DNA of 64,000 nucleotides from Perna viridis. Its lineage: Eukaryota. Below, one piece after another: positions 1 to 20,493 of this stretch (positions are counted from its first letter, which is position 1; every line of letters starts with the position of its first letter). The DNA is taken from the NCBI GenBank assembly GCA_037379345.1, contig CM074520.1:8928001-8992000 (forward strand). Direction: 5' to 3'. The position numbers and the translations under genes were made by a program. A model generated the notes under the pieces. That model was not told the DNA's origin. It saw only the letters and a list, made by a program, of their open reading frames with translations, and did no database searches.

Positions 1-320
1 TTTTTGGAAAAAGGAGAGAATGATAAGATGTACATAAAATATGGATTATTTTAAAACATAAACTGATACCATAACATTATGGAGCCTGATGAATTATATA
101 TAATGCTGGTGGTATCTTTTTGCATGACTTCTCAAAACCGGCATTTTACATTGAGCAATGCTGATCAGACTTAACGAATGATCTAATTACAATTCATTCA
201 AGAAAGCAAAGCAATATATGATGGCACGAAAATGAACTAGAATATACAGGATGAAATGTACAGAAATAAACAAAACAAAAATAAATCCCTATCAGCAACT
301 GGAGGAGGATAAATACTCAC

Positions 321-1097
321 TTCAGATAATATTGACTTCCCCTTTGTTCTAAACAGTAGAAATCAAAGTGAATTACATTTGGTATGTTAACGCTATATTG
401 CTGTATAACGGTAGAATTATAGAAATTCATATCCCCTCTATCAGCTCCCTTCCACACACCTGACAAAGTCGATGGAAAATCACATGGTTGTGAATCTGAA
501 ATATATAAATGGTAAAATCGTAAAATACCGGGTTGAACAAAAAGATTTTTTCATGAGGAAGAAATGAGACATATGATATATCATTTATTATATCTTTAAA
601 GTCAGGTGTTTACATAGCTTTAGCGTGCGATATGTTTTCTTCGTTTCATTCATTTCATCAGTGGCATCAGATGGTTGAGATTCAACATGTTCATTAGTAT
701 GCTAAACCTAAACGCTTGGATGTAACGTAACACGATTCATAATGTTTGCATCCTTAGACATTTAGAAAATCCTTAAGACATCCTTAGAAAGATTATTTCT
801 ACTCTTTTTTTTTAATATTAATATCTTACTTTACTTATTGATTTGATAATGCGACAACTTTTGTAGAGAACACTTTATATATTTTTATTTACAGTGTTTG
901 TCTTTGAGGTAGTCGATAATGACAAACAAATTTCATGCTATTTTATCTTAAATTTACCCGTCGTCTTTACATTTCCTGAAGGTGTGAAAATTAAATAAAT
1001 TAGGACTTCATAACAGTCCTACCATGGAAACAATTATACTAGACTTACCTCTAATTGTAAAGAATAAGATACACAATACAATTGATACCAAGGCCAT
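321..1097 (-). CDS. Cys-rich secretory-pathway protein, paralog A (first two coding exons; gene continues beyond the left window edge)
   Basis: Exon 1049-1097 encodes a signal peptide MALVSIVLCILFFTIR (donor gtaagt, phase 1). Exon 321-495 (175 nt, tttcag/gtgagt, phase 1 to 2) encodes DSQPCDFPSTLSGVWKGADRGDMNFYNSTVIQQYSVNIPNVIHFDFYCLEQRGSQYYLK. Phases and the C..P / DFxC..YxLK motifs match paralogs B and C. Confidence 0.8.
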
Positions 1098-2825
1098 CTT
1101 CTCGAAACATCGAAAGTTAAAAGATCTAAAAAAAATATGAACTAAAGTTCATTGAATCATTGTGGTTTGTTAATATTATGTCAAAGTTACCATGGTCTTA
1201 ACATAGGGAACTGCAGGGTTATTAAACAAAAACCCATTTGTTGAAATAAACACAGAAATGTTTTAATACGATTCCCTTACTTGATTAAAACAAACGAATG
1301 TTTATTTCTTCTGACCAGTATTAAAGCTCTCACATTCTGACTGCATGAGAAGGAAAGATAACATCAAACATTTTAACAGATGTAATCATCCATTTCAAAA
1401 ATGAAATTTATAACCACCCCTTTAAATACACGTTGTCTTTGTTAAACCAGTTATCGTTGGACGTTAGTATTCACGAGAGATGGTCGTTAATTCTATATGA
1501 ATTGGTCAACCAGTTGAAATATTGTAATTTATACCAATACTTCTATTTTTGGTAAATGATGAACAATCAGTTATTTGATTTATACTCAGAAAGTAAATTA
1601 AATAATAAACATGACAATTTATTATGAAACATAAACGTATTTTTTTTTATTTCGTTAGTTGAAGAATATTGACGCTTTCATGTCCAGATTCCCTCATTGT
1701 CAATAGAGACATTAAAATGGTAATGGATTATCACGATATATGCAAATCATTGAGAAAAGGAAAAAAACAACATTACCATTTTAAAACTGCTTCCAGTCTG
1801 TTTTGAAAAAAAAAGTTGTTTTTATGAATCCGCATATTTGACATACATGTAAACAAGGTGAAGTTTTAACTAAAAAAGGATTTAGCAGAAACGTAAGTAG
1901 TTTGTGAAAACATAAATACGACTGATTTTAAATATCTTTTACTTTACAGCGTACTATTTATTTTTTAAGCTGAAGACAAGTACATAAGTTAATAAAATCT
2001 AACAAGAAAGAAAATTATTGTCAAAATACTGTAATAGATATAATACTGTTACCAAAGGGTTTTTTCAATGTAAACGTGGGCTGCATGTGGAATTATATAA
2101 TGCAAAATTTAGCTCTCGAAAAATAAACTTAGCTTGCTCATCGTACGCTATTGGTTTGTGTATTTTTGTTGTTCTTGTATAATTGTTGGACGTACAGTTG
2201 GGTATTGTTAGATGTAGCATTAGTATTGTCTGTTGTCACTTGAAAGAAGCTTTTAGGCACAGTAATACGATCTTAATCATTCACTTTCTTATAATTAATT
2301 CAAAGCTTCATTTCTACTTAGCATATTGGATGCATTAAAAATGATGGTAAAATTGAAAAGGAAATGGATACAATCTATTGAACATTATGTCTGTTACTTG
2401 CATTGACATTTTGGGGTTGCTGGGGTCAAGTGAGAGATTTATCTTTATAACTTTTAAGTGGGTTCCTTGTGACATGTTAGCTATTCTAGTTAACTGTTGA
2501 CCCGAAAGTGAATATGCTCATTGTAATGTAAACCAAAATTAGTCATTGGGACAGCAGTGAACTTTTTGCACTAATCCAGAATTCATTGTCATTGGGCATT
2601 TAAACGTTAATACTTTTACAATGTTATCTTACAGACGCTGTTTGAAAAAAAAAGCATTATTTCAAAGTATTTTATTAAATGGCTGTTTTAATTGCTTAAG
2701 CGTTAAATTGTCAATAATTTAAAAATTATATATTAAAGAGAAAACATTGAAAGCAACTATTGAGAAAGCACCATTACGTATATGTAAACACCAGAAAGTG
2801 CTAACACCGAGTGTTTATACAATAT

Positions 2826-3022
2826 TTGGGCTTTGTCTGCTGGTACGACAACATATATGTCATGTATAGTAGACAATGTTTTTGCTACATCGGGGTTTTT
2901 TGAAAACTGATGTAGCCTTGGCACTCATTGACCTACTTAAAACTTTCGTTTGTTTCAAAATTAAAGACCTCACGGCCTTTAGCACAATTACCGCTATAAC
3001 CTTGGTTCCCTTGATTACACTT
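2826..3022. mobile_element. Chimeric Penelope-like (Naiad-type) fragment: internal piece (-) joined to an inverted 3' terminus (+)
   Basis: 2826-~2980 closely matches ~6010-6170. ~2988-3022 is the family 3' end (ATTACCGCTATAACCTTGGTTCCCTTGATTACACTT) in the opposite orientation. Confidence 0.75.
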
Positions 3023-3039
3023 GCACATGCATTGAATAT

Positions 3040-4547
3040 GGTCTCACTAACCACTTCCGGGTCAAATGGCCACCCCCCTATGTAGTACCAAAAACACACT
3101 GAACCTAGACATATGCATTGTAAGTGCATTATTTGTGTGTATTATGATTAAAAGTAGTCAAAATAAAGCTGAGAATGTGTACTTTAAGATCATATATGTA
3201 ATTAACTACAAAAGTGTATGAATATTGTTTACATGTGTGAGTAATTTGCCTCCATGCTGTCAGTTAGCAGAACAGGTAAAAATGTGGATTTTCAGTATTA
3301 TTTATTCAAGTAAATTTTGTGAAGAATTTCTACTATGATCGTACCATTAGCATAATGATTTTGGAAGCCTTATTTTCCAAGCTTCGCAACGGTATGCAGC
3401 TTGAAGATGTCATTTGTCCTGGGAATTCACAGTGAGACTTTGAAAATTACTTTTTTAACATGTAAAGTAATGGAAACGTTAGAAGTGGTTAGTGAGACCA
3501 TAAATTAAATTATGGCATATTTCAGAGAAATGCATAATTTGAGGAAAATTGCCTTTCCTGGTCATTATTTCCATTTTCCCATAAAATCAGTATAGTGATA
3601 TTGGTAATCTGGCTATATTTTAAGAGGTGCATTGTGCAAGGTATTTTAAAAAACAACATAGCAACAAGATTTTTATCAGTAACAGTTACTCATAACTTGA
3701 CGTCATCCATGAAATACACAACGTCACTGCTTGGGATATTCAAAGTACTCAAATAGTCACACAGCACAGACTAAGAATCACACAGTAATGAAATAGGTAT
3801 GATATAAATTGTTGAAATCTGTTCTTTTTTCATAATGATAAATGATATTTACTATTACAACTTCTTGAATTATCATAGGTATCAATTTGGTGTGACAAGT
3901 TAGTTAAAATTGTAATTTTTTAGTAATTTAGGGAAAATATCACTGAGGGGCATGATATAAAAATGACCATTTCTTTGTAGTCCTATGTCTGATTTTGATA
4001 GTTTTGGTCTTATTAGACTCACAATACCACAAGCTTTCATAAAATGTAAAAAAAGAAAAAACATAAAAACTCATAAAATGTTTTTAAGGTCTCACTAACC
4101 ACTTCCGGGTCAAATGGCCACCCCCCTATGTAGTACCAAAAACACACTGAACCTAGACATATGCATTGTAAGTGCATTATTTGTGTGTATTATGATTAAA
4201 AGTAGTCAAAATAAAGCTGAGAATGTGTACTTTAAGATCATATATGTAATTAACTACAAAAGTGTATGAATATTGTTTACATGTGTGAGTAATTTGCCTC
4301 CATGCTGTCAGTTAGCAGAACAGGTAAAAATGTGGATTTTCAGTATTATTTATTCAAGTAAATTTTGTGAAGAATTTCTACTATGATCGTACCATTAGCA
4401 TAATGATTTTGGAAGCCTTATTTTCCAAGCTTCGCAACGGTATGCAGCTTGAAGATGTCATTTGTCCTGGGAATTCACAGTGAGACTTTGAAAATTACTT
4501 TTTTAACATGTAAAGTAATGGAAACGTTAGAAGTGGTTAGTGAGACC
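3040..4547. mobile_element. Non-autonomous composite DNA transposon, KolobokP-like: two 460-bp long terminal direct repeats around a 588-bp non-coding core
   Basis: 3040-3499 and 4088-4547 look identical. Each has its own TIRs GGTCTCACTAACCACTTC...GAAGTGGTTAGTGAGACC, GG..CC termini and AT-only 4-mer flanks (ATAT, ATAA, TTAA, TATA). The outer TSD is imperfect. Confidence 0.8.
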
Positions 4548-5087
4548 TATAGACATAATTTGTTTTGGTTATCATTCTTCCCTAATGTACAAGGCTTAAT
4601 TGAATTCTGATTGTCACACCGATTGCAGGGAAGTTCGCCTCGTCATGGTTCTCTTAGATTAGTGTGGGCGAGGCCTAAAATGCCAACAGAACGTTCATGA
4701 AAACAAATACATAAAAACTGTATTCGACACATTAAATTTGTATATGAAAACAATGATTGAGGGATAAAATTGGTGAATATTGATGCCAGCGGTAAACATG
4801 GATTAAGACGGGTAGCATGTCCTTAATTTGGACCTGTCTTAGTTTGTTTATTATAAATTAACTGTCAGAATTATTCTTGGAATAGAACAAATATATCTGC
4901 AAAACTTATTTTACACGAAACCAAAACACTTGTTTTTGTTATAATCGGAAGTATTCTAATTGTGCTATCGTTATGCCAACTGTGGTCTTTGAACTTTTTT
5001 TTTTGTTATACATCTATTGACAAAACAAACTACGCATTTGAAATACAAACATACCATTCGTATGCATTGTATAGAGCTAATTTAGAT

Positions 5088-5131
5088 ATGCTGTACACCT
5101 GTTTCAAGACGCAACCTCTCATCAGCAGCAT
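5088..5131 (-). ncRNA. Minimal type I hammerhead ribozyme
   Basis: Minus strand reads ATGCTG-CTGATGA-GAGG TTGCG TCTT-GAA-AC AGGT GT-A-CAGCAT. This gives a perfect 6-bp stem I, an intact CUGAUGA/GAAA core, a wobble-rich 4-bp stem II, a very short near-palindromic stem III and a GUA cleavage triplet (cut between 5094 and 5093). Confidence 0.75.
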
Positions 5132-5233
5132 TAGAATCAACTTTATAGGAAGATGTAAATCAAAACATAAACTGTATACAAGAAGTACATAAAACCAAAA
5201 CTATCGAAATAGGAAGCCAAATGCAACATGTGC

Positions 5234-6372
5234 AAGAGTAATCAAGGGAACCAAGGTTATAGCGGTAACCAAAAGAACGTAATTCAGGGACAAAGACCAG
5301 ACATGAGAAACAGACATACACAACAAAGAACATAAAGTAACTAAAATCATACATACAAAGTAACAAAAGTAAATGAGCAACTCGGACTCCACTAAAAACT
5401 GGGAGCAGGTGCACTGGTAGGGTAAGCGTCCTCTGCTTTTCTAGAAACACCCGCCGAGTTGCTCATAAAAAATCAAGTCCGGGGTAGACAAACGAGGAAT
5501 GGTAAACTATGATCCGTTGAATAAATCAGTTTTCATGGTGCTGATGGATACACCATAACGATCCACGAGTTCATGATGACGACCATAAAACTCCTGTAAT
5601 GATGACTTCAACCTTGTAGCAAAATAACCCTGTTCCACAATCCTATTTGTTAGAGTTCTAGTGCGATACAAAACGTCTGCGTAGTTTCGGCAAGCTCTGG
5701 CATAACGTATGAGTTGTGATATGAACACTCCATACGCAGGAGCCGAAGGGATGTTGCCACAGATGAAAGGAAAGTCGACAATTCTGACAGAAAAGTCATC
5801 ACGTTTGTCGTAAAGTTTGGTTAATAGTTTTCCTTTTCCATCGATTTCTAAGTGTAGGTCAATATATGAGGCTGACTTCACAGTGTCTGTAGTATCCTTT
5901 ATCTCAAGTTCTTTTGGGTAGATGCAATGTATCAAATCCCCCAATAATAATTATCCTCTGATAATAAACATTGGACATAAAACGTTTTGCAGACAAAAAC
6001 AATGTTGTTTTGGGCTTTGTCTGCTGGTACGACAACATATTTGTCATGTATAGTAGACAATGTTTTTGCTACATCGGGGTCTTTGAAAACTGATGTAGCC
6101 TTCCTTGGCACTCATTGACCTATCTAAAACTTTCATTCGTTTCAAAATTAAAGACCTTACGGCCTTTAACCACTCTGGCAGAGAATCAATGTCTTCTTGT
6201 TCTCGTTTTATCCATTTCCTTGCATAGTCCTCGACGGCATCCATAAGAACTTTGAAGTTATAATTCCAATTTATGGAGCGTGGTTCACGATACTTGGGAC
6301 TTTTAGAAAGGATATTACGCAGAGATTCGTTTTCGATAATGGTTAAATCTCCCGTAACGACGTGACCAGAAT
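5234..6372 (-). mobile_element. Penelope-like retroelement (Naiad-type, RT at C-terminus), 5'-truncated and internally deleted
   Basis: ORF 6044-6376 has GHVVTGDL..LRNILSKxPKYREP..INW, followed by a frameshifted VVPADKAQNNI. ORF 5507-5944 has [49 protein letters not shown] and stops with no C-terminal GIY-YIG. The RT core is deleted near 5945-5990. Structured 3' UTR at 5234-5506. Confidence 0.85.
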
Positions 6373-6709
6373 ACAAGGATTGAAAATAATCTATGTTTCA
6401 TGTGTTCAGGAAATCAGGACTATTGCAGTACCGGCTGCTCTGATGGTGCAATATCGATTTTCCCAGATTTTTTTTGGTCTTGTCTTGAGTATGGATCGGA
6501 TTAATGTTTGGTAATTTTGTTGTTACCCTTATTCACGTTAAGGCCGTGATTTAGGATTTCGACGCATTTGAAACACCCTAATATGACGTTTTGGTATTTT
6601 TAACCGATATGTACCTAAGTGTTTCACGTATTTTACATATTTTGAAATTTGTAATACTGCAAATTTGGATAATTATGTCAAATAAAATCTTTCGGGGTCA
6701 GTCAAGTCC

Positions 6710-6900
6710 GACTGCTGGGTTGGTGAATATCTTTGAGGACCCTTAGTTCACAAGCATTACTGATTACTCTATATATATATGTAATTGAAACACCCCACTA
6801 TTGACGCTTCGGTATTTTTTTTACCGATGTCTGACCACTGGGTTGATGAATATCTTCGAGGACCTTTAGTCTACAAGCATTACTAATTATATATATTTGT
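6710..6900. repeat. Degenerate two-copy repeat (~123-bp spacing)
   Basis: GACTGCTGGGTTGGTGAATATCTTTGAGGACCCTTAG..CAAGCATTACT at 6710 recurs with substitutions at 6833. Both copies end in (TA)n. Confidence 0.6.
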
Positions 6901-8379
6901 TTGATCACCATCCGTTTAGTGTCCTTCATTTTATAGTTCTTTTCTCTTCTGTGATTTTTTTATTCGTTCAGTCTCTAAAACAGTTACATGTAGTGAGAGG
7001 GGCCTATTATATCGCCCTGAAATGCATGTTGATTGGTTTACTATTTGAAAGATAGATTTAACGTTCTATGACAGATGTTTCATATATTTAAGAATGAAAA
7101 CGCTTGATCAATTGCATAACCCTACATTTTACTAGCTTGACCTGCTAAGCTAGACTATCATTGTTTCAAGACTGTAAATTACAAATTTAAAATGGAGGCT
7201 TGTGATCACGCAAAACAGTATTTTAACCCCGTCGCATTTTTTGCACCTGTCCCAAGTCAGGAATTTTTAGCCTTTCTATGTATTGTCTGGTTTTCACTTT
7301 CAGTTTACTTTTAGCTTCCTGGTGTATATAGGAGAAACGATTTTGCTGTACCTGTGTATAATTTTGTTTTGGGGGTCAACTGCAGCCTGCCCTGTAGTTT
7401 GAGGTTTTCCCCGTCGTTCATTGAAGACCCATGGTTGCCTTGAGATATTTGTCAGCCCAACAAAATGGTTGTCTCTTTAAAATATTCACTATATTTCCAT
7501 TATCGTTATGCATTATGCTTTTAACGTAGGAATAAGTTAGACGAATAGTAATCGTTTTGCGTCTTTTTTTTTAAATATTCTCTTTTAATCGAGGTTTTTT
7601 TTCCAGAATATCAATACGCGCACATTATTTTAACTTTGATCGTTTTGTGTATATTTCTGATCCTAATGTGAAGTTTAGTAAATGATGTAAAAGAGATGTT
7701 TTGGTTGACACAAAAGCCCAGAATGGTCGATTAAAGGGTCAGAAACGATTGTTTTATTGTATATTATCAATCCTTATGAAAAGGAAATCAAGGAAACTAG
7801 GATTTAAATTTAAAAGTACAAGCTGACTGCTTCTGTGGGCAAAAATGAAATAAAAAGATGTAGATATAAAAGCAAATATTAAGATCCATACGATAAAAAC
7901 TTTTTTTATATTGTATTTCACAAGCATTTTTGTAGTTTGTGAAGCACACGAAAAAAAATATGGCAAATGAAAAGATGAACTCAATGCTGTATAAGTTTGT
8001 TTCGATATTGTCCATGTCAAGTTTTTAATTTTCACTATGTCCAGTTTCAGATAACACTGATATCTTGGCATGCAATATTTCAACCTCGCATCATATATAT
8101 ATGCACCCTTGTATTAACATTCTATGTATTTACATAGTAATGGGAATAGAAGTAAGGTGGGGGGGGGGTTGAATTCCCACATCCCATTAGACATCTTACA
8201 TGTGTTATATGCTACTGCTCTACTGCCTCATCAGATACCATCAGACGTCCTTTCCAGTTACATCATAAGCTTATGTCCGCACTCTAGATTTACGTACGAG
8301 AAAGTATTACTCTGTTAATGAAAGCTATATTTTATATAGCCTAGTTGGCTGAGTGGTCTATAGCGTTCCCCTTTAATCT

Positions 8380-8510
8380 CGAGAGGATTACAAGATTTTT
8401 CTACTCGAGATAATTAAAATTAATTTTAAATTTCAACTCACGAACTTTAACGAGTGGGTTAAATCTAAAATGTATCTATCGAGAGTGGAGAAATCCTGTA
8501 ATCCCCGAAG
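8380..8510. repeat. Long imperfect palindrome, probably part of a non-autonomous DNA element
   Basis: GGATTACAAGATTTTTCTACTCGAGATA ... TATCGAGAGTGGAGAAATCCTGTAATCC are inverted arms. Confidence 0.55.
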
Positions 8511-9230
8511 GAATTGGAGGAGAATTTGTTTCTCCCATAAAACCTTTAAAAACTAGTAAATGTAAGATGGCAGGAATACTCTCGGAGAAATTTAATCACC
8601 TTTTGGTGGTTAAACAGTTACGTGCATTTTTAATCATCGGCGGAGAATGAGAGAAAGAATTTAATATACCGTCAAAAAATTGATGATACACCTAAAACTA
8701 ATAAAATGTGTTGTAACAACAAATGAATCGTGTGAAAAGTCGTTTGGTCATAGTAGAAGCTTAACTTCACAACTTGAGTTCGCAATATCACTTCTTTGTA
8801 GAGGACAAAGTCCTCACAATGGTAACCAATACAAAAAACCCTTTTAACCTTAGAAGTACTATGAGCCTGATTTCAGTCTGACAGGAACTTGTAATACCAA
8901 GGGTAATACAAAGCAAGGATTCATGTTTTTAGTTTCGTATCTTTAACAACATTAGGTGCATATAGCTTTAACTTATGCAGAAAATATAAATCGTAGTTGA
9001 TGTAAAATTGTTAAAAACATTTTATAAAGATATCAAAATTCATGTTTGTATCCAACTTTTTCCTCTTACTGGTTACATCTACCTCATATTAAACACTTAT
9101 TTACTATAATCAAACAACACAAATATATTAATATAACATCACTTTTCCGGCATTCACATACATAGACTTCCTATACAAACTATCTCCTATTTTTTTATGT
9201 TCACACACTTCCGAAAAAAAAATGACGAGG

Positions 9231-12200
9231 TCACCTTTCATCGTTGTTTTCAAATAGTCCCGAATCGCTGACACTGATCTGGGTATAGCTTCGGTGTATT
9301 CCTCCGCTCATATAGTCATCAAGGGTGTCCCTGTATAACGGTTTGATGTTTGGAATTGTCATTACACCAGCTGGTTTTTGTTCCAGGAATATAGCACTCA
9401 ACATTGTAAATTCATCCACGGGTTTCTTTGGTCTGAATAATGAACTCATATTAAAATCGGGTGGTTGCACTATTGGTCCGTTAAATCTTGCACGTCCAAC
9501 CTTTTCACCTTTGCTAACATCAATTTCTGTGGGAAGTCTTGGGGAAAGACGTTTCTTCTTAAATTTTGGTAACTTAATTTTTGGCCGTTTAATATGTTTA
9601 CATATACAACCATATTTTTTGTAGCACCACATGAACATGCAAATTATCCAGATTAGGAGAGGAATGAAAAACAGAGCACCAATTGTGTAGTATAGCCAGG
9701 ACAAGCTAACAGGTTCTTCTGGTGTGGCTAAGAATTCAATGTTAAGAAATAAAAGTAAAAAGTGAGATTCACGCTGGAAAATGCTTAGATTTTTTTCATC
9801 AGCAATGCAAAAATTGGCAAATGAAGAGTGTACTTAAGTGCTCGTTTTAATTCATATGAATGTTTATTTGACTTCTCATGATTACACATCGATGAAAGGA
9901 AATCCTTCTATATAATTGTTAATTGTGTAAGGTGATATTTTAAACACACGATAGACTCTGAAATCGACAACAGTAAAATTATAAACTTTAAACATCGACA
10001 AAACAACATTTGTGTTGCGTTAAACACAACAAATTAAAAAAGGTATAATTTGATATTTATAACAAACATACAACGTACCTGGTACAGTGTCTAAACATGT
10101 CTCTGAAAAAGAAGTGATTGTTCACAAAAATCAAAGGCTATCATTGATACTATCAATAAGTTACTGTTCAATCAAATAAATTACTTTCTTGTCTAAACTA
10201 GCTAAGACATTAAAATTGAAGTAAAAGAATGCGTAATTGTATTATTTTAGAACTTTCTATCATAATGTCACTTTTACTTTTATTGTTAGAAATTCATATA
10301 TATATGACAAAGTGTGCGTGGAAGAGATATCAAGTTTGTATAACGGCATTTTGACCCTAATATACTTTTCCGGTCATACCATATATATTCCAGATAACAT
10401 AAGAGACACCATTTGCTCCGGGGTTTGTAGCGGTAGTTGCAACTTCACATATGTTAGGTGTTTCCGTTGCATAAACTACAGAACCTTCCTTTCTAAAAGC
10501 CTGCCAAAATGAATGAGATAGTTGGTTATGTTTATATCAATACACAGATAAATTAATAAAATTACAAACCATTCAAATTAAAAATAATCATCGTGGAAGC
10601 CTTGTTTTTTTTTTGTTTTTGCTTTTTTTGTTGAAATGATAAATCTGAAAAAAATATTGTATTTCCCATCCACTGACTTTTGGGTGATGAATTTCACATG
10701 GACGTGATGAAATTTGTTTCTGATGGAATCAGGTCAATGTTACGTCATCCTGAGTATTTTTTTCGGTAATTTTTTTTATTTAAAAGAAAGGAAAATAAAA
10801 TACTATATAGTGATATTATTGTACTTAAATAATCATAATTCATAGTAATAAGTTCGCACAAAAAGACGTACCAAACAAGAATACCGAAACGTGTTTGTTT
10901 CATCCACATTCAGGTCTTGATTCCATAGACCTAAATAGGACGATGATCCCACAGTTGTAGAAAATAAACAACTGTAGTTACCAGTACCTGAAACATATGT
11001 TGTTCTAATAACATATAATAAAACAACTCGATACAACATATGAAAAAAAAAACAAATAAAAACGAACAGAAAAAAAAAAACAAAACAAAAGTGTCAATAT
11101 GGGTGTATTAAGATGAATCAAAATCAATTACTTTAAACATGCTAACTTCGAATATTAGGTTCTTGCTATATTTAGTATAGAAACATGGTCGATTATACGT
11201 TTTATAACAGCCTTACTTGAGAGTTGCTTTGCTGGAGCCGGACACGAATCATTATAATTGAAACTGACCATGGACCTGTCGGCACAAACATCCACTCGCC
11301 CACCATCACAGTTTTGTGTAGAACCAGCACCAGATGTTACATTGAAACTAAGAAATACTGCCAGTAAGTCATCGGGACATCGTTCATTCAGTAAACCATC
11401 ATTGAATGCATCTTTATGGAAAAGTAATAAAAATGAATTAATTGTACTAGTATACAGATATTATTCTTAAAACTCATATTCTTAAGCTTAATACAAAATA
11501 TCTTTCAAAATTAGTAATTCTAAATTTTATCAAACTGTTGGTAGTTCATTCATTGTTGAAAGCTAAATTTGGTTAAATTCCTTGTTAATATCATGGGATA
11601 AACTTGATCAGTTGACTATTTTAAAACAATTATCAGGCCAATAGAAACTATAATTTATTCTCTTCGAATATTTATATAGCATCACCTCCCTTTACTAGCA
11701 TGACAAAAGTCTGTTTTTCATAAGGATATGGACGGTTACATGCGTCTTCAAAAGTACCACTATTACCAGTGGAATCTCCGTAAAGGTGGTCCTGTGCTAT
11801 AGCATGGTATTCTGCAAGAAGTAACCATATCATCATTTAGTAGAAGATTGATATGTCAAGAAACGACACTGATCATGGGACTATGAAAAGCAAATACAAA
11901 TACTATAAAATATAAAATTCCTATTCCAAAATTATTTTCTGGATTAAAAATAATGAGCTTAAGATTTCAATGTAGATACTTCGTAAAGTGCAACGCAAAA
12001 ATGCTCTTTATATCTTCTTTTTTAGACAAAAGATGTTTTACTGGTTTTGTCGTCGTATACAAACCTGTTCCAAGATAATAATAATACGTGTAGTTATTCA
12101 CTTTGAATAGCTCGATGCACATATAAAACTTTGTAATCACATTAAAGATGTTCGGCTCTTTCACCATTCTGAAATATATGATAAAATGTTAATGCTAGTA

Positions 12201-14748
12201 ACCATATTTAGTTTTTACATCCTTAATAGTACTATATTAGAATACCTCGAAACCAATTTTCAGCCTTAGTTTACAAACATTTTAATTTCATTTTTACTCA
12301 TGAATTTCATATAATCCATATCATTTGAAGCCTAAACCTAATGCAGACATATTCCGTGCTTTAATACTTATATCTCTATTGACAAAAAAGTATTAATGGA
12401 AAACGATAGGACATTTGTTGTAATATTTATGTATAACTGTTTGATAAATACTGAATAATACATGTCAAAATTTGTATCACATGCGGTATCAACCCGAGAC
12501 AACTATATCACCCCAAGGACCATAGGTCGAAGGTTGATACCACTCGTGATACAGATTTTGATCTGTCATGTTCATTATACCATATTTTTTTAACTATACT
12601 TCAAGTATGGTCGGTGAAGGGGTGCGATATAGGTATGCGATATAGATCTAGGGGTGTGATATAGGGTATGCGATATTGGTCTAGAGGTGTGATTTAGGGT
12701 ATGTGATATAGGTCTAGGGGAGTGATATAGGCTATGCGATATAGGGTAAACGATATTGGGTTTCAACAACACACATGTATATTTTAATCTAAATGTATGA
12801 AAATACTTAGTTTCGTTCACACTGATTAATTTCATTTACAAAGAAATATTTCTTACTTTAGGAAATATCGATCATTTCTTTTTTCAACACATTCAAAATC
12901 AGAATGGTCAAAATCTGTGAGCGGTATTGTCAGTGGGTAGTTGATAAAGTGTGTCGTGTTGGCACCAAAAGTTCCTATAGAGGCACTGATGTAGGTGTCG
13001 GAATCTACAAATGGCATGGCACAAAGCGCAGCTGAAAAACAGAAACTCCAAGTGATATACTATATACTAATTTAAGGAATTTGATGTACTTACACGGAAG
13101 TCTTTTGAAATATTTTATTTTTAGGAGTAAGCATTATCAATATCTATTTTCCCTTGCATTACTCTTACTTCAGTTTAAAAATAAATGAAAGCACCTTAAA
13201 AGAAATATTACAAAAAAACCGGTGACGTAAGTATAAGTAGTATAAGTAATCAGTGACAAACATTATACACAACAATGGGTATATGTTGAATCCACACAAA
13301 TGTCTATATAAAGTTGTTGAGTATGTTTTATAATGTGTTTTTTCATATTGATCCTGTAGTAAGTCCAAAGCCCAAAGACAGTCCTTTCGGACCAAGGGTA
13401 GATGTATTGGGCCTTAGCCTTGCCTCAGTCCAATAGGACTTGTCGGAGGACATGATACACGACCAATAAGAAGACAAAAATCTTCTTTGACACATTTATT
13501 TACCATGCAGTTGTGTAAAATATAAAAAAAATATTACTGTGTTGACACATACTGTAAGGATTCGTGTATAAAATGCGCAAGTAAGACGGCGCTCTTGTCA
13601 CATTTAGCTGTGGAGCCAGCTACAGTTACAGTTAGATATAAATTGTAGCATAATTGAAAATAAAATTGCGCATATTTTATTGGTATATTTCTATTCCTAA
13701 ATTATAACAAAAATATTCTGTATTATTTTGTTGACTACCGGAAGTATAATATCCATATTGAGCCTGTTCGTATGAGGCCAGTTAATCCATATTCAGCCTT
13801 TTTTCATATGGTGTCTATTTTCTATGTATTAGGCCTGTATTTTCGTATCGGTTCAATTATCGATTTTTTTTAAAAATAATTCTGGACATATAAAAAGTAT
13901 TGAATGGACAACTGTAATCACATTTTACACAACTGGTTAAAGAGTAATCAACAGAACCAAGTTTCTAGCGGAAATCAAAAGAATGAAATCCAGGGACCAG
14001 ACATGGAAAATAGACAATAACAACAAAGAGCAATAAGTAACTAAAATAATACATACAAAATAACAAAAGTAAATGAGCAACTCGGACTCCACTAAAAACT
14101 GGGAGCATGGAACAAGTGCACCGGTAGGGTGCAATTCTAAAAACACCCACCGAGTTGCTCATAAAATGTCAAGTCCGGGAGAGAAAAAGGAAGGAAAACT
14201 ATGACACGTTGAACAAATCAGTTTTCATGGTACAGATGGATACACCGTAACGATCCACGAGTTCATGATGACGACCATAAAACTCGTGATGACTTCATCT
14301 TTTAGCAACATAAACCTGTTCCAGAAGCCTAATTGTAAGAGGTATAGCTCTGGCATAACGTATGAGTTGTGATATGAAAACTCCAAAGGCAGGCGCTAAA
14401 GTGATTTTGTCACAGTTGAAAGAAATTAATTCATATTATTGACGTTATAAACACTTTTCACAGTCTTACAATAACATCAAAAGTAAATATTTTGATTATT
14501 TCCTATTTGTTACATGTTGACAGTTAATATTAATTGATATATCGTAAAAAATACAATAAAAGTGTTTCTACTATGAAAATACCGGACAGCGAAAACATGG
14601 ATCAGAATTAAAAAGAAAACTTTTTTACATTTAACGAAATCTTTGACATTGCGTTTGAAAAATAGCAAATTAAAGACCAAAATTATTTCTGAATATAATT
14701 ACCTGCAGATGGTATCCAAATCGAAATAAAATAAAATAAAAACGTCAT
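9231..14748 (-). CDS. Cys-rich single-pass type I membrane protein, paralog B (9 exons, 467 aa; uncharacterised)
   Basis: Exons 14703-14748, 12857-13031, 12065-12168, 11686-11811, 11217-11411, 10872-10987, 10380-10500, 10079-10102 and 9231-9727 are all GT-AG and phase-consistent, total 1404 nt. Hydrophobic N-terminus MTFLFYFISIWIPSAA, Cys-rich ectodomain, TM WLYYTIGALFFIPLLIWIICMFMW, basic Cys-containing juxtamembrane region and a ~130-aa tail. Confidence 0.88.
12460..12745. repeat. Palindrome plus ~33-bp minisatellite (non-autonomous DNA element remnant) in an intron
   Basis: Inverted arms CAAAATTTGTATCAC..GGTATCAACC / GGTTGATACC..GTGATACAGATTTTG, followed by three to four GATATAGGTCTAGGGGTGTGATATAGGGTATGC-like units at ~12626-12745. 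Confidence 0.6.
13940..14425 (-). mobile_element. Naiad-type Penelope-like element, 3' fragment
   Basis: Matches 5234-5770 (RT C-terminus [12 protein letters not shown] plus 3' UTR) with deletions. Confidence 0.85.
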
Positions 14749-15940
14749 CCTTAAAAGAGGGGTAGCATTAACATGCACGGACAAAATTGAAATGGAAACA
14801 TAACACATAGTAAGAACAAGATCACTTTTCAACGTACTATACTGGATGCTGCACCTAAATTACTTTTATAACATGTTATTAATGTCATTAAATTGAAAGG
14901 GAGCGTTACTGTGTATATAATTGAAAAATACCTCCTTAAACAAGAATACTATTGTTCTTATATGGATGTTTAATTACAACGTGACGATTTTTGGCGATTT
15001 ATGGTTTTTTTCTTATTAAAAGTTTTTAATAATGTAAATCAGGTAGCAGGTACTTTTTTTTAAATACTTATAAATTCAGCTAATTTTGTATGTTCGGCAA
15101 AGACCACCTTTCAACCGTTTATAGATTCATGTTAAGGTATTTGTTCGTGTTGGTATACAATGCCCGTAAAATAAAAACTTACTAAAAACAGCTTATACGA
15201 AGGTGGCATCAACAATATAAATTCATAATTCTAATCTAGGCATATTGAAATATTTTTTTCCACAATTACTTATAGTAATCTATCTAAAGAAATAAAATAG
15301 GTATTACTACATTTTATACAGTTGTAACCTCTCATTACAAACGTTATTTTATAGGTATAATGACTCCCTTTACCAATTGTCCATGCTTACTTTCTTTCTA
15401 AAATGTTACATAACTTTAAGCCACCATCATGTACATATCGACCGATAAGGTGTTACTACTTATCTCTACTGTAGATAAAAATTGAGTCCATTTATCAACG
15501 TGTTTATAGTGTGTGCTTATTGAACACAATATTATTCAGTGTTTTTAAAGCTGGCGACTCTATACTCATGCAATGTCCCTGTGTCGCCAATCAGTTACTT
15601 TTAGTTTTATACGTTTTTAAGGTTTTAAGTTAGGATTTTTTTCATCGTCTGTGTTACTTCAGTATTGCTTTCGCGTTTATTTTGTTTTTCGTGACTAGGT
15701 TTTAATCTCGTATTCAAATTGATGTTAAAAATCTATGTTACAGTATACTATTTTAATATTTCACCGAGTGGGACGCAATAGAGTTTAACAACGCCCATTT
15801 ATGCTCAGATGGTTAAGTTGGTGTTTGAATAAAAAGCACGTTTTAAAGAGGTTTAATCACTTCTATTTTAACTTATCAAATCAGCAAACGGTTAAACGTT
15901 CCCTTCTCTTAATCGATTCAGTACAGCATATACTAAGACG

Positions 15941-18035
15941 ATGGCTGTAACAGTTACAATAGTGTTTATGTCAATGTTGTATGTTGGCTGTGTCTGTAAG
16001 TATGATTCTATTAATTTTGATTTCTTAATTTTTGTTATCTTATAAGCATGGCTTTTATCATTTTACGAACTTATTTCTTTATTTTGTCTTTCTTGTTTTC
16101 TGACATTGTCAGTTTATGCGTTTTCGAAAGTGTTTTTCCTTTTTTTTTTGTATCCTTTCAACAGTATATTTGCTCATCTTATAACTGAATTCGCATTTTG
16201 GAACAACTTTGATTATGCTGTCATAATATTCCTTGTGGTGTACAACAAAGATTTACTTTTTACGATAAAACAGAAAGGCAATACAGAAATCAACCATTGC
16301 GCGAGTAATTAATTATGCACAAAAATAAACATATTACGAAATTTCCTTCTCTGTTTTGCTCCTTGAAAGAAACGGCAAAGTATTTAATTACAAAAATTCA
16401 TATTTTTATAAATGATTTTATTCGTATCCATTGACTTCTAGATGCAACCTGTATATTCCCAGAGTCCCTTCAAGGAGTTTGGAGTGGCGGTACAGACGGA
16501 CAAACATCCTTCCAGTTTAATGGTGATACTTTGAGAAACTTTAGATTAAATGTACCGACTATGAAATCTAGTGATTTTATATGCTACCAGAACCAGAACG
16601 ACGGAGATAAACAAACCTACATACTGAAGTAAGTACCTATATATAGAAGTAGGGTAGTCCACCGATTATCGCCTGGTATTGTTTCTAATTATTGTAATTA
16701 TTGAAGCCCCTGTATGAGATGTAATAGAATAGAAACCTGCTAACAAAAAATATATAAACAAATGTATTGAAAGTTTTTTTTAACAAAACATCCCCAAGAA
16801 GAGGTAGGTAATAGTATACGAAATTCTTCCAAATCAAGATTTACAAAAGAAACTTATCAGAAATAAATGAGGCAAAAATATGATAATAATAATATTTTTA
16901 AAAGTAAAATAAACTAAAAACAACAGAACACAAACACACACATTAGGAACATAACACGAGCGCATAATTAAAAAAAACAAACCAAATTAACTAGTTACTC
17001 AGTAAAGAGATTACGTTCTCTTTTTACATATATCCTTAAAAAATACATTTTACAGAATTTGTATTTGAAACATTGCAGGGCAAAAGATACAATAGAGATG
17101 TTCAATTCTGTGTTTAATCTGTACTTCTGTCTGACAGTGCAAGACGAAACCTACGCTATTGACACAGGTAACGTACCTATTCATACACACATTGTTTAAA
17201 GGTGGGCTGTGGGTACGTTGATCATTTTTGATCACATTTGGTGCATCATTTATGGAATAAAGAATAATTTATACAAGTATTTCGTTATATAGGTTTGCTT
17301 GCAATATATTAATGAATAAATGTAAAGCATAAGTTGTATATTGGTTTGATATTGTAGGATTCAACACTTACCTGAATGATAAAATAACTGCAGTTCCACT
17401 GGGAACAGAACCCAACTTAAATGACATATGTAACCGGGAAGGGGACATAAGTGGCATGCAGAAAGTTTCACCAAGAGGATTTGCAGGGAGGGCTCAGTCA
17501 AGAGACACTAATATTGAACGGTACTTTTTTACACCTAAAGCAATGTTTGGAAAATTAGAAACTACCCTATCTGTTTGTTCTTCTATCGACATATAAAGGG
17601 GATGATATTATGTAACTGTTCAATAATGTGTTATGGATTTGATAAGAATGTTGTAAAGCGTATGTAGATGTACATAAAAGAAAGAATTGGTCAGTGAATG
17701 CTTGCAAAGGAAGACAATTCTACTTAATAATAATTTTGAATTTTGAGCTTTTGAACACAACTTTCCACTAACCATATCCTGTTAGCATATCTCCCTCCTA
17801 GAGCTTTGAGGGATTTCTGTTAAGCAAAGAAAGATTTGACGGTATTAATATGCGTACATTGAGAAAATAAAAATCGAAAGGCAGCTCTCCAGAAGCGCGT
17901 TTAATGATATTTCATGAAACTTTGTAAAATGTAATAATAATATATTTTTTTAAATAATTAAACAAACCTTTTCTCATTTTTTTCTCCAGAATAGTAGAGG
18001 AAATAAAGACACTAGCCGAAAGGAACAAGAACTAA
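15941..18035 (+). CDS. Short secreted Cys-containing protein, paralog C (5 exons, 179 aa; no TM)
   Basis: Exons 15941-15995, 16442-16628, 17079-17167, 17358-17520 and 17990-18035 are GT-AG and phase-consistent, total 540 nt. Signal peptide MAVTVTIVFMSMLYVGCVYA, then TCIFPESLQGVWSG...DFICYQ...TYILK, ...YFCLTV..., ...DICNR..., ending IVEEIKTLAERNKN*. The last junction is the least certain; read-through of exon 4 would stop at 17596, also without a TM. Confidence 0.8.
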
Positions 18036-18121
18036 ACCGATGATTCTTATCTTTGCAATAGATGTTTTAGTGGAGATTTCATTTGTATATTAAAGTTTTT
18101 TGTACAACTAGACACCTGATA

Positions 18122-18302: not shown

Positions 18303-20493
18303 CTATTGTCGAAAGACAAGGATTCGTTTCCCACAATCACTAGATATAACTAGCTTTCTTAACTTTCTACTGTAATGAATTGCATACGGGAGATGGAGAG
18401 ATTCGAAGGCAGGTTCATCAATGAGATACTTGCTTCCATCAGGGGAGACCTCTAAAACATGCGGCGCTGATCCGTAGTTGATAATAAGGATTCTACTCTC
18501 CGATAACGAAGTTATACCTTTGAAAATTGAACCCGGGAACTTGAATTTATAAACAGTTTCCCCCATATGATCAAAACAAACAATTGAACTGTCATCATCA
18601 TTGGTGAAGAAGATTTTGTTTCCGCATACATGCACGTAATTTCTGTAGCTGACAGGAGTTATGACAGTGTTGATAATTTGACCTCTATGATCAATAACAA
18701 GTAATCCCTCCGTCTTACACGCAACCACAAAATACTTGTTCATTTTGGTAATACCAAAGCACCCGTAGGTAAGTTCAACAATTTTGCGCTTCTCTTTGTC
18801 TTTCAAGTAGACTACTTGAAAGTATTTTTTAAACGGAAGTGTCACAAAAGCCCTATTTGGGTCAACCATTGCAAAATCAAACGGCTCATCTTTCAGATGG
18901 TATGTATCTAAAACACTGCCGTCTTCGGCACAGTTAAGTAAACGTTTGTTTTTGCTATCTGCCAACAAAAGGTTCCCGTCATCAAGGATTGTGACACCAG
19001 TAATCATTACTTTATCTTTCTCGTCTGCTGGTATAGCAAAATCGGACGACAAGTAGAAACTTGGAACTATTGCTTTACGCTCAAAGCTGAAAGTGTTTTC
19101 CAGACGGTTCTTATCAACATACTTGGGCAGAATAGGAGTAAGTGTCCGGTTTCGTTTGCTGTTGTTGGGCGACTCAGTGTCTCTAACAGTGAGAATATCC
19201 ATATCGACATGGACCGGGCTGCACAAATGCGGATCAAAACCGAGCTGGTGTGCTGAATATGGAATTTGTGTCCGATCAGTGTTTTTAGGAACATCAATTT
19301 CTACTTCAGTTTCCATAAGGCGGACTCCGCCTATCTTTTCTGCATTCAAAAGTTTCTGAAAGCTACTTTGAATCGACAGATCAACTTTCATTTGCTTTAC
19401 GCTTTCAGGTAAACTAAGCAAATACCGCTCATGTCGCGTCTGCACGTGAGCACAGTCCTGGATAAAATTAACGGTTTCGGCATTCGATCCCACTAATTGA
19501 AGCTCTTCAATCATTTCAAGATGTGCAGTAATAGCCTTTCGTTTTTCTTTTAAATCATCCATCTGAACTTGAAGTCTTGACTTATAGTCACTTACATCGC
19601 TGTCTATGTCTTCTAGAAGTTTTCTTACGAGACTGTCTATTGCTTTTCGCATATTTTCTTTGAAGTCGTGAACCTGATCTTTCATTTTGTCCTTTTGAAG
19701 GTCTAAGGCCTTAATATTTTTATTTCTATCCTTCAGAATCTTACCAAATGCAACACTGGATTCTTTTAGCCTCTGCTTCAAATCATTGATCGCAAAGGAA
19801 TTACGTGCACCAACACCATCGGCGTTGATGTCCAAAGTCTTGCAATTGAAATGCGAAACGTCTTTTCTACAAAGATCACAAATTGTGTGATTGTGAAACC
19901 GGCAGTACATTGATATTACTTTTGACGGATGTGTCCGACAGAATATAATCGGTCTCTCCTTTCTCAGGGCAAAGATGTGGTAATCCTCAACGGACACGAA
20001 GCTATGATTGGACGAGAATTTCAGTTTTTGGTGACGTTTCTTGCACGGAGAACAAAGAAACTTGTCACATTTATCACACCAACCAACAGCAATTTTGTTC
20101 TTTCCTTGTCCAGCACAGTTGTTGCATGGAAAAGTCGTAGCCATTCTTGTTGCTGAAAGAATAAATGTGTTCAACATCAAATTTATAGTGAACCCCTGCT
20201 ATATTTGACTTTAATTGTTATTCATTGATATGTTTAATTTAATGCGTAATATGTGGTTACTTAAGAAAAAAAAATTTGCTTCAAGGCATGAGCCCCAATT
20301 AAGTTGAATGTCTGTGATGAATGCCAAAAGGCTTATTTGCCCTGAATAACCACACCCCCTTGAGATATTCGAAACGCCCTATATCCTTTTGTTTTAACAT
20401 TAACCCCATCCCGACCCCCTACCCACCTAAAAAAAGATTGACTGATAGATAAGTGAATATTGACAACTTACCCGACATCGTTTTACCAGCCAT
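18303..20493 (-). CDS. RING-less TRIM-like protein: two B-boxes, coiled coil, NHL-like beta-propeller (623 aa)
   Basis: Exon 20472-20493 (MAGKTMS, gtaagt, phase 1) splices in frame to exon 18303-20152 (acceptor tttcag). B-box1 CNNC..WCDKCDKFLCSPCKKRH..H, B-box2 CRTH..YCRFH..ICDLC..H, heptad-rich middle, and ITGVTILDDGNLLLADSKNKRL-type propeller repeats. Confidence 0.9.

What the first reader, a model, noticed from the sequence alone, without database searches (positions are those of the whole stretch)
321..18035. Three-gene cluster of an uncharacterised Cys-rich family: a membrane receptor-like gene head-to-head with a short secreted paralog
Seen: three genes share a phase-1 signal-peptide exon and a phase 1-to-2 second exon (175, 175 and 187 nt) ending DFxC..YxLK. 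B and C also share exon 3 (YxCI/L, ends T-G|gt) and exon 4 (DxCNR). B (467 aa) adds further Cys-rich ectodomain, a TM and a tail with juxtamembrane Cys and Tyr motifs (e.g. YTQI). C (179 aa) stops after the first module and has no TM. The B and C start codons are only ~1.2 kb apart and divergent. The ORF track misses nearly all of this. Inference: a co-regulated receptor plus soluble decoy/ligand pair of a fast-evolving invertebrate family. CxFPxxLxGxW recalls DUF7042/7044-type modules, but this is unverified.
Basis: partly seen in the sequence, partly recalled or inferred. Interest (0 to 1): 0.75.

Follow-up and report, generated by a model that had tools for sequence, protein, structure and literature searches.

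The report
Bivalve receptor-like gene family cluster
These are real, transcribed genes of a little-studied shellfish family of cell-surface proteins, one of which has become a short secreted version; what any of them does is still unknown.

Summary
I rebuilt all three gene models by hand. B is a 9-exon type I membrane protein of 467 aa, or 487 aa from an upstream in-frame ATG. A is a full 9-exon paralog that runs off the window's left edge. C is a 5-exon, 179-aa protein with a signal peptide, 4 Cys and no TM.

The family is not unassignable. Full-length relatives occur in scallop, oysters, pearl oyster and mussels, all labelled "uncharacterized". A's ortholog hits Pfam DUF7042 above cut-off and DUF7043 just below it.

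The cluster is larger than three genes. At least two more paralogs lie left of the window, and there are about 15 loci genome-wide. C is not a recent truncation of B. Its nearest relative is D, another short gene 4.1 Mb away with the same exon plan.

The receptor/decoy pairing with B is untested, and several points count against it. B's first domain is the most divergent in the family, and the C:B contig-depth ratio varies about 16-fold.

The parts
1049..1097 (-). Gene A exon 1 (CDS part): signal peptide MALVSIVLCILFFTIR plus 1 base, donor gtaagt, phase 1
   Evidence: Matches the N-terminus of ortholog P0003.
321..495 (-). Gene A exon 2 (175 nt, phase 1 to 2): the first half of the DUF7043-like domain, with CDFPSTLSGVW. 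The other 7 exons of A lie left of the window at G000:C10:8923579-8927697.
   Evidence: (DUF7043 E 0.0033)
14703..14847 (-). Gene B exon 1. There is an in-frame upstream ATG at 14808. The transcribed exon reaches at least 14847.
   Evidence: (joint 13031|14703 in 4 of 4 runs; the X10 contig reaches 14847)
12857..13031 (-). Gene B exon 2 (175 nt): a divergent first half of domain 1, reading CAMPFVDSDTY instead of CxFPxxLxGxW
12065..12168 (-). Gene B exon 3 (104 nt): YMCI and the YYYY motif
   Evidence: (joint 12168|12857 in 3 of 4 runs)
11686..11811 (-). Gene B exon 4 (126 nt): DACNR and the end of domain 1 (TFVMLVKG)
11217..11411 (-). Gene B exon 5 (195 nt): start of the DUF7042-like domain, 4 Cys
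10872..10987 (-). Gene B exon 6 (116 nt), 2 Cys
10380..10500 (-). Gene B exon 7 (121 nt): the YATETPNxC motif
10079..10102 (-). Gene B exon 8: a 24-nt micro-exon (ETCLDTVP). A has the same micro-exon (GTCEIIIP).
   Evidence: Family consensus.
9231..9727 (-). Gene B exon 9 (CDS plus stop): stalk, TM segment (KD19 2.46), juxtamembrane CYKKYGCIC, and a conserved tail (FRPKKP, PLYxDTLDDYM, RSYTQIS)
14848..15577 (.). Region between the outermost observed 5' ends of B and C: the candidate shared (bidirectional) promoter. No notable repeat or palindrome.
   Evidence: The promoter role is inferred, not shown.
15578..15995 (+). Gene C exon 1. Contigs start at 15578 (X1), 15695 (X5) and about 15860 (X10, X12). 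The ATG is at 15941 (MAVTVTIVFMSMLYVGCV plus 1 base).
16442..16628 (+). Gene C exon 2 (187 nt): CIFPESLQGVW ... DFIC ... YILK
   Evidence: (DUF7043 E 0.002)
17079..17167 (+). Gene C exon 3 (89 nt): YFCL
   Evidence: joints in 4 of 4 runs
17358..17520 (+). Gene C exon 4 (163 nt): DICNR followed by a novel charged stretch, with a phase-2 donor. D shares this donor position.
17990..18035 (+). Gene C exon 5: IVEEIKTLAERNKN plus stop. There is also an unspliced variant across 17521-17989 that ends ...SVCSSIDI*.
   Evidence: (joint 17520|17990 in 4 of 4 runs; read-through contigs in 4 of 4 runs at lower depth)

Best explanation
The interval holds the right-hand end of a tandem array of one bivalve-wide gene family.

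Long members (A and B here; Z and Y just left of the window) are type I membrane glycoproteins. From the N-terminus they have:
- a signal peptide;
- a 4-Cys DUF7043-like domain (exons 2-4);
- a DUF7042-like domain that, with the stalk micro-exon, carries 8 Cys (exons 5-8);
- a Thr/Pro stalk entered through a 24-nt micro-exon;
- one TM helix;
- a juxtamembrane Cys cluster;
- a cytoplasmic tail whose motifs are kept from mussels to scallops (FRPKKP; P-L/I-Y-x-D-S/T-L/I-x-D-Y-M; in most members RRxS..SLYSF).

C is a separate, strongly transcribed, correctly spliced gene. It encodes only the signal peptide and the first domain, plus a short hydrophilic end. It therefore most likely leaves the cell as a soluble single-domain protein.

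C and D (4.1 Mb away) form an old 'short' subfamily with their own shared fourth intron. C is therefore not a recent truncated copy of B.

Shown: gene anatomy, transcription, splicing and family membership.

Inferred:
- The long forms act as surface receptors or adhesion-type molecules that signal through the conserved tail.
- C acts outside the cell as a soluble binder of whatever the membrane-distal domain of the family recognises (about 45%).
- It is specifically B's decoy or ligand (about 15%).
- The 0.73-kb gap is a shared promoter (plausible but untested).

The confidence figure given applies to the anatomy and the family assignment, not to these inferred functions.
For: Splicing and transcription:
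- All 6 laid junctions are seen in 3-4 of 4 runs from 4 studies.

Paralogy:
- A and B share all 8 intron positions and phases.
- Exon-2 scores beat 500 of 500 shuffles for all 6 pairs.

Family:
- The tail profile found 19 proteins at E<=1e-3 among 1.84 billion.
- These include full-length proteins named only 'uncharacterized' from Argopecten, Magallana, Pinctada and Mytilus.

Pfam:
- P0003 (A's ortholog, 58-90% identical across the seven exon-level tblastn matches) hits DUF7042 at 31.5 bits (cut-off 27) and DUF7043 at 25.8 bits.
- 9 of 10 exon-2 peptides hit DUF7043 at E 0.0006-0.045, always on model positions 2-52.
- hhalign against a canonical DUF7043/7042 ORF of this genome gives E 1.6e-4 over 189 columns, with the Cys residues aligned.
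- The nearest ESM Atlas clusters are molluscan DUF7042/7043 (0.95, 0.94, 0.91).

C has no TM:
- Maximum KD19 is 0.65 in any C exon, against 2.46 (B) and 3.21 (A) in the TM exons.

The short form is old:
- C's best match in its own genome is D (40%, E 2e-6; tblastn E 1.4e-10).
- C+D is the only resolved fork in the exon-2 tree (86/82).
- D has the same phase-2 donor in exon 4 and open exon frames.

Soluble forms recur:
- Oyster LOC105321891 has predicted isoforms that stop just before the TM.
Against:
- DUF7043 is below Pfam's cut-off in every protein of this subfamily tested.
- B's own exons hit no Pfam family.
- C's exons 3 and 4 are barely similar to A and B. After its fourth Cys, C lacks the conserved strand (T/Y)-(F/I/V)-x-(L/F)-(V/I/L)-(R/K), so its domain may be incomplete.
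- No short relative of 82-261 aa was found in 5.8 billion proteins or in metagenome contigs. These are weak blanks.
- Secretion, membrane topology, glycosylation and palmitoylation are all unproven.
- The C+D support is modest and the bootstrap had not settled.
- Contig depth is a poor measure of expression.
Confidence: 0.75

Rival explanations
1. One reading: B and C are a co-regulated functional pair. B is a membrane receptor and C is its own soluble decoy or ligand, both driven from one bidirectional promoter.
For: - The ATGs are head-to-head and 1193 bp apart. The transcript 5' ends come within 731 bp or less.
- Both are present in 4 of 4 laid runs. Four further runs of the same species hold next to none of the stretch.
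- C keeps the 4-Cys pattern of the receptor's outer domain.
- Soluble isoforms are predicted in oyster.
Against: - The runs were chosen for holding the stretch, so co-presence is biased.
- C:B depth ratios are about 8, 16, 93 and 122.
- C's exon 2 is least like B's (z 5.0, against 16.6 for A and 17.9 for D).
- B replaces F, G and W of the family-invariant motif, which C keeps.
- C's sister D is not head-to-head with a receptor. It lies in tandem behind E.
- Another head-to-head pair at C10:21.92 Mb consists of two long genes. The arrangement is therefore not tied to a long/short pairing.
Confidence: 0.15
2. C is a transcribed but functionless remnant: a partial duplicate of a long gene that kept its promoter, signal exon and first domain exons and acquired a chance terminal exon.
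For: - Exon 3 and exon 4 similarity to A and B is weak.
- The conserved last strand of domain 1 and the YYY motif are lost.
- The C-terminal 40-odd residues have no relatives.
- No homologue was found by word search.
Against: - The frame is intact through 5 exons with canonical GT..AG introns.
- All 4 domain Cys are kept.
- It has a deep, intact paralog D with the same derived exon plan.
- Contig depth is high, about 8- to 122-fold above B's.
- There are no differences inside the laid CDS pieces in X1, X5 and X12.
Confidence: 0.1
3. A and B are not signalling receptors but structural or adhesive surface glycoproteins, with the tail serving only for sorting. C is an unrelated-in-function secreted matrix or immune protein.
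For: - The canonical DUF7043/7042 protein of this genome is a 691-aa intronless ORF. It has a Ser/Pro-rich stalk and a hydrophobic C-terminus and no signalling tail.
- E has a TM but only a short tail.
- YTQI fits a Yxx-hydrophobic sorting signal. That consensus is recalled, not tested.
Against: The tail motifs are conserved across mussel, oyster, scallop and pearl oyster over about 150 residues. That is more than a sorting signal needs.
Confidence: 0.2

Closest known systems
Pfam DUF7043 (PF23070) / DUF7044 (PF23071) with DUF7042 (PF23069) / DUF7045 (PF23073) proteins, e.g. the 691-aa intronless ORF at G000:C9:14596273-14598345 of this genome
   Same: - The domain order is the same: a CxFP...W 4-Cys module followed by a CP... 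Cys-rich module.
- Cys positions align (hhalign E 1.6e-4).
- DUF7042 is above cut-off in A's ortholog.
- The nearest ESM Atlas clusters are mostly molluscan.
   Different: - The canonical protein has two DUF7043-DUF7042 units, no introns, a Ser/Pro stalk and a hydrophobic C-terminus without a conserved tail.
- A and B have one unit split over 7 exons, a TM and a 130-150-aa conserved tail.
- DUF7043 scores stay below cut-off (14.5-25.8 bits).
- The function of these DUFs is unknown. I found no paper naming them (0 papers).
Magallana gigas LOC105321891 and its orthologues: Crassostrea angulata LOC128156709, Mytilus californianus LOC127726358, Argopecten irradians XP_069131019.1 and Pinctada imbricata KAK3100157.1. 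All are 'uncharacterized'.
   Same: - The architecture is the same as A and B: 12 ectodomain Cys, the YYY motif, the TTTEAP stalk, a TM, and the FRPK(K/R) and Y-x-D-S-I/L-x-D-Y-M tail.
- The oyster gene also yields predicted soluble isoforms.
   Different: - The oyster's soluble forms keep both ectodomain modules and arise by alternative splicing of one gene. C is a separate gene with only the first module.
- Identity to A and B is about 30-45%.
- No paper names these loci in searchable full text (0 papers).
Receptor / soluble decoy pairs in general, e.g. vertebrate TNFR-family decoys and the IL-1R2 type (recalled from general knowledge, not from any call)
   Same: A membrane form and a secreted form share an extracellular binding module.
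   Different: There is no sequence relationship. No binding, ligand or signalling is shown here. This is an analogy of logic only.

Membership tests
Pfam DUF7043 (PF23070) | Whole-protein score at or above the curated cut-off of 27 bits | tested here: not met
   - Exon peptides: C 18.9 bits, A 18.2 bits, and 7 other paralogs 14.5-20.5 bits. Each exon 2 covers only about half of the model. B has no hit.
- Full-length relatives: P0003 25.8, P0007 21.5, P0010 21.6, P0009 20.8, P0018 16.7, P0021 15.1 bits.
- The joined A, B and C proteins were not scanned, because the joined step was left out.
Pfam DUF7043 (PF23070) | Collinear match to the model from the N-terminal CxFP motif, with conserved Cys spacing | tested here: met
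   - 9 of 10 exon-2 peptides match model positions 2-4 through 44-52.
- P0003 matches positions 3-79 of 104.
- hhalign aligns C1-C4 with a canonical member.
Pfam DUF7042 (PF23069) | Whole-protein score at or above the curated cut-off of 27 bits | tested here: inconclusive
   - Met by A's ortholog P0003 (31.5 bits, residues 159-280).
- Below cut-off in the oyster proteins: P0024 25.1, P0018 23.9, P0025 22.3 bits.
- No hit for P0007, P0021 or P0038, or for the single exons 5-7 of A and B.
Bivalve TM subfamily (LOC105321891-like) | Conserved TM plus cytoplasmic tail (C-Y-K-K-Y-G-C, F-R-P-K-K/R, Y-x-D-S/T-L/I-x-D-Y-M) | tested here: met
   - B and A tails against the family profile score E 4e-22 and 2.3e-56 in the own genome.
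- The tail profile retrieves proteins from Argopecten, Magallana, Pinctada and Mytilus.
- C and D have no such exon. Single-sequence and profile searches find tails only at A, B and Z.
Bivalve TM subfamily (LOC105321891-like) | Twelve family-invariant ectodomain residues of domain 1 (C, F, P, G, W, G, Y, C, C, YYY) | tested here: inconclusive
   - A keeps all of them.
- B replaces F, G and W with M, D and Y.
- C keeps C, F, P, G, W, G and three Cys, but has F for the Y and only one Y of YYY.
This is read by eye from alignments A3 and A4.
Receptor / decoy pair | The soluble form binds the receptor's ligand or the receptor; expression is coupled | not testable with these tools
   - There are no binding data.
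- Only 4 contig-level runs, chosen for holding the stretch.
- Read laying and the look-up of sequencing runs have one call each.

The most novel reading that the evidence does not exclude
C and D are ancient secreted single-domain antagonists or co-ligands of a bivalve-specific family of DUF7043/DUF7042 surface receptors. The receptors' conserved phospho-tail defines an undescribed signalling pathway. The B-C bidirectional promoter couples a receptor to its own soluble modulator.
Probability: 0.12. Interest if true: 0.65.

Novelty: new member of a known kind. Interest (0 to 1): 0.4.

Why it matters
Bivalves carry many expanded, unnamed surface-protein families thought to serve immunity and self/non-self recognition. 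Few of these have verified gene models.

This report adds four things:
- Transcript-verified models for a membrane member and a secreted member of one such family.
- A link from that family to four Pfam domains of unknown function.
- Evidence that its cytoplasmic tail is conserved across four bivalve orders.
- Evidence that a soluble first-domain form has been kept as a separate gene lineage.

That gives experimenters a defined pair of constructs (the C protein and the A/B ectodomains) for binding and localisation tests.

It does not by itself reveal a new mechanism. The proteins already exist as 'uncharacterized' predictions in other species.

Tried and rejected
1. Pfam on single exons of B gave nothing useful for 8 of 10 exons. 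Only the exon 2 peptides of A and C gave weak DUF7043/7044 hits. The weak B exon 6 hits (GldC-like and G7C_C, E about 0.1) were rejected as chance.

2. A word search for short (82-261 aa) relatives with the domain-1 alignment A3 had 275 candidates. None scored at E<=0.01. At E<=10 there was one 74-aa protein at E 9.7, which I rejected. The first alignment, A2, misplaced the exon-4 rows and was not used for searching.

3. Two metagenome scans were blank: A5 (C+D exon 2) and A1 (tails). The tool warns that records of this genome or of near ones may be left out. I therefore could not test whether C, or the B-C arrangement, is conserved in other species.

4. The PDB sequence search with A4 returned only a chance PsaN hit at E 0.27.

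5. An ESM Atlas search that skipped the four DUFs gave no usable hit.

6. Paper searches for DUF7042/43/44, LOC105321891 and six accessions or loci found 0 papers each.

7. D's terminal exon could not be fixed without reads. D ends within 3 codons either way.

8. The intergenic region showed no notable repeat or palindrome.

9. I looked for ITIM, ITAM and SH2-type motifs in the tail by eye, using recalled consensus patterns. None fits family-wide. YTQI is confined to B and P0002.

10. Species identification failed. The exact look-up of the neighbouring B-box protein found only an unnamed Logan record.

11. Depth-based co-expression was rejected as evidence, because the tool itself warns against ranking by contig depth.

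Full report
**What is in the sequence**

The window is AT-rich (about 30-38% GC) and has no N runs.

They lie at 320-364(-), 12856-12900(-) and 16573-16629(+).

- **B (- strand)** has nine exons: 14748-14703, 13031-12857, 12168-12065, 11811-11686, 11411-11217, 10987-10872, 10500-10380, 10102-10079 and 9727-9231. The CDS is 1401 nt, or 467 aa.
- **C (+ strand)** has five exons: 15941-15995, 16442-16628, 17079-17167, 17358-17520 and 17990-18035. The CDS is 540 nt, or 179 aa.
- **A (- strand)** has exon 1 at 1097-1049 and exon 2 at 495-321. It then leaves the window.

I computed lengths from coordinates only.

**Transcripts**

The look-up of sequencing runs listed 24 runs of one organism. I laid contigs of four runs from four studies on 12060-18059. 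The contigs are spliced, so these runs are RNA.

Joints seen:
- B exon 2|exon 1 (13031|14703): 4 of 4 runs.
- B exon 3|exon 2 (12168|12857): 3 of 4 runs.
- C 15995|16442: 3 of 4 runs, plus matching loose ends in the fourth.
- C 16628|17079: 4 of 4 runs.
- C 17165|17356 (cut +2, so 17167|17358): 4 of 4 runs.
- C 17519|17989 (cut +1, so 17520|17990): 4 of 4 runs.

All have GT..AG ends on the gene's strand. One X5 contig of 1405 nt has 1066 nt beyond B exon 3. The model predicts 1079 nt to the stop.

Results that complicate the model:
- Unspliced contigs cross C's last intron in all 4 runs at lower depth (79.9 against 1040.6; 108.8 against 1145.9; 272.2 against 392.3; 19.9 against 41.1-318.5). 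They give an alternative end...SVCSSIDI*, which also has no TM.
- B's exon 1 is transcribed to at least 14847 and contains an in-frame ATG at 14808. B may therefore start 20 codons earlier.
- C's contigs start at 15578, 15695 or about 15860. The gap between the B and C transcripts is therefore at most 731 bp.

**Gene A and the size of the cluster**

B's tail exon finds one other tail in the genome, 4 kb left of the window (37% identity, E 2.3e-14). Fetching that DNA shows that A is a complete 9-exon paralog. It has the same intron positions and phases as B, including a 24-nt micro-exon.

A profile of full-length relatives (A4) gives 38 exon-level hits in this genome. They include:
- A third complete gene (Z) and a fourth (Y) further left.
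- Loci on the same contig near 11.6, 13.07-13.11, 17.1, 21.92, 22.0 and 40.2 Mb.
- Two loci on another contig.

An earlier first-reader note of this scan (s1-780787) had flagged 'four tandem receptor-like genes' on the adjoining window. I located A, Z and Y myself. 'Three-gene cluster' is therefore an effect of the window edge.

**What family it is**

The word search with B's tail found only the window's own ORF and P0002, a 169-aa fragment that is 62% identical.

Pfam left the exons open, so I ran the large search with a tail profile of B, A and P0002 (alignment A1). It returned 19 proteins at E<=1e-3, 11 at <=1e-10 and 3 at <=1e-30.

Full-length hits are:
- P0003 (453 aa). The source is an unnamed Logan record. 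It is 58-90% identical to A across the seven exon-level matches, so it is A's ortholog in a related species.
- Argopecten irradians XP_069131019.1.
- Magallana gigas LOC105321891.
- Mytilus coruscus and M. californianus proteins.
- Pinctada imbricata proteins.

All are named 'uncharacterized' or 'hypothetical'.

Pfam results:
- P0003 hits DUF7042 at 31.5 bits (cut-off 27) and DUF7043 at 25.8 bits.
- Of 10 exon-2 peptides from paralogs of this genome, 9 hit DUF7043 (E 0.0006-0.045), always on the first half of the model. B's does not.

Other supporting results:
- A canonical DUF7043/DUF7042 protein of this genome is a 691-aa intronless ORF with two such units. It aligns to the family profile with E 1.6e-4, probability 50%, over 189 columns, with the Cys residues in register.
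- The nearest ESM Atlas clusters are molluscan DUF7042/7043 clusters (0.95, 0.94, 0.91).

This is a divergent, single-unit, TM-anchored branch of that superfamily.

No paper in the searchable library names these DUFs or loci (0 papers each). Supplements were closed. No relative has a solved structure by sequence.

**The short gene C**

C has a hydrophobic N-terminal exon, four Cys at the family's domain-1 positions, no N-glycosylation sequon, and no segment with KD19 above 0.65.

Its closest relative is not B. Exon-2 alignment z-scores are 17.9 against D, 16.6 against A and 5.0 against B.

D lies at G000:C10:13.065-13.069 Mb. It has a signal exon, exons 2-4 in the same phases, and, like C, an extended exon 4 with a phase-2 donor. 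It ends within three codons even if that donor is unused.

In a tree of 17 exon-2 peptides, C+D is the only fork with support (UFboot 86 / SH-aLRT 82). It is not starred and the bootstrap had not settled.

Five other candidate loci were checked. Four (L007, L009, L011 and E in L012) have second-domain exon 5 and 6 matches, and L008 has a weak exon 7 match. One (L010) showed only exons 2-3 within 10 kb.

C and D therefore look like an old short lineage kept intact, not a fresh truncation.

Evidence against a complete domain in C:
- After the fourth Cys, C lacks the conserved strand seen in all long forms.
- The YYY motif is reduced to one Y.
- Exons 3 and 4 are only marginally similar to A and B.

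**Receptor features**

The TM segments score KD19 2.46 (B) and 3.21 (A).

The tail alignment across B, A and P0002 has 41 invariant columns. These include C-Y-x-K-Y-G-C, K-L-P-K, F-R-P-K-K-P and Y-x-D-x-L-D-D-Y. The wider alignment keeps F-R/K-P-K, Y-x-D and, in most members, R-R-x-S..S-L-Y-S-F.

YTQI occurs only in B and P0002.

Reading RRxS as a basophilic-kinase site, and the Cys cluster as palmitoylation sites, is my inference from general knowledge and is not tested.

**The pairing hypothesis**

For:
- The head-to-head layout.
- Both genes are present in 4 of 4 laid runs.
- Four same-species runs hold next to none of the stretch.
- Oyster has predicted soluble isoforms that stop just before the TM.

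Against:
- The runs were selected for holding this stretch.
- C:B depth ratios span about 8 to about 122. Depth is itself unreliable.
- B's first domain is the family's most divergent. Three of 12 invariant residues are changed, including F, G and W of the motif that C keeps.
- D sits in tandem behind E, a long TM gene with a short tail, not head-to-head.
- A second head-to-head pair at 21.92 Mb joins two long genes.

I put a B-specific decoy or ligand role at about 15%. I put a family-level soluble binder role for C at about 45%, and a functionless remnant at about 10%.

**What could not be done**

- Two metagenome scans and two word searches for short relatives were blank. Conservation of C outside this genome is therefore unknown.
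Other notes of this scan call it a mussel, which I did not verify.

**Verdict**

The family assignment is confirmed at superfamily level. The functional pairing is unproven and somewhat disfavoured. This is a well-documented new member set of a known but uncharacterised kind, of moderate interest.

Noticed in passing
It lies inside the transcribed exon 1, so B may be 487 aa with a longer leader.
   Followed up: partly
window 17521-17989: C's last intron is retained in lower-depth contigs in all 4 runs. This gives an alternative C-terminus that ends ...SVCSSIDI*.
   Followed up: partly
window 18303-20180 (- strand): A single-exon ORF of 624-625 aa carries a B-box zinc finger (PF00643, 29.2 bits). 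It is convergent with C. One 2190-nt X10 contig joins C's 3' end to this region, so the 3' ends probably overlap.
   Followed up: partly
window 13860-14459 (B intron 1): This repeat has very high RNA-contig depth (about 7e3 to 1e5) and many variant joints. It resembles the ORFs at 5160-5450 and is probably a transcribed mobile-element fragment.
   Followed up: no
G000:C10:21919068-21929175 (L013, L014): A second head-to-head pair of family members lies here, both of the long type. Their second exons are about 3.4 kb apart, the same spacing as for B and C.
   Followed up: partly
G000:C10:13070705-13075973 (L005, L012): Paralog E is long, with a TM exon, only a short tail and tandem peptide repeats before the TM. 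It lies directly upstream of the short gene D on the same strand.
   Followed up: partly
G000:C9:14596357-14715779: At least three intronless ORFs of 661-712 aa carry canonical DUF7043/DUF7042 units above the Pfam cut-off.
   Followed up: partly
P0010 (Pinctada imbricata KAK3087298.1): This database model fuses a retroelement endonuclease domain (PF03372) to a family member and lacks part of domain 1. It is probably an annotation chimera.
   Followed up: no
window 5507-6376 (- strand): The ORFs of 145 and 110 aa between A and B gave no Pfam hit. Earlier first-reader notes place a retroelement and a hammerhead-like motif here.
   Followed up: no
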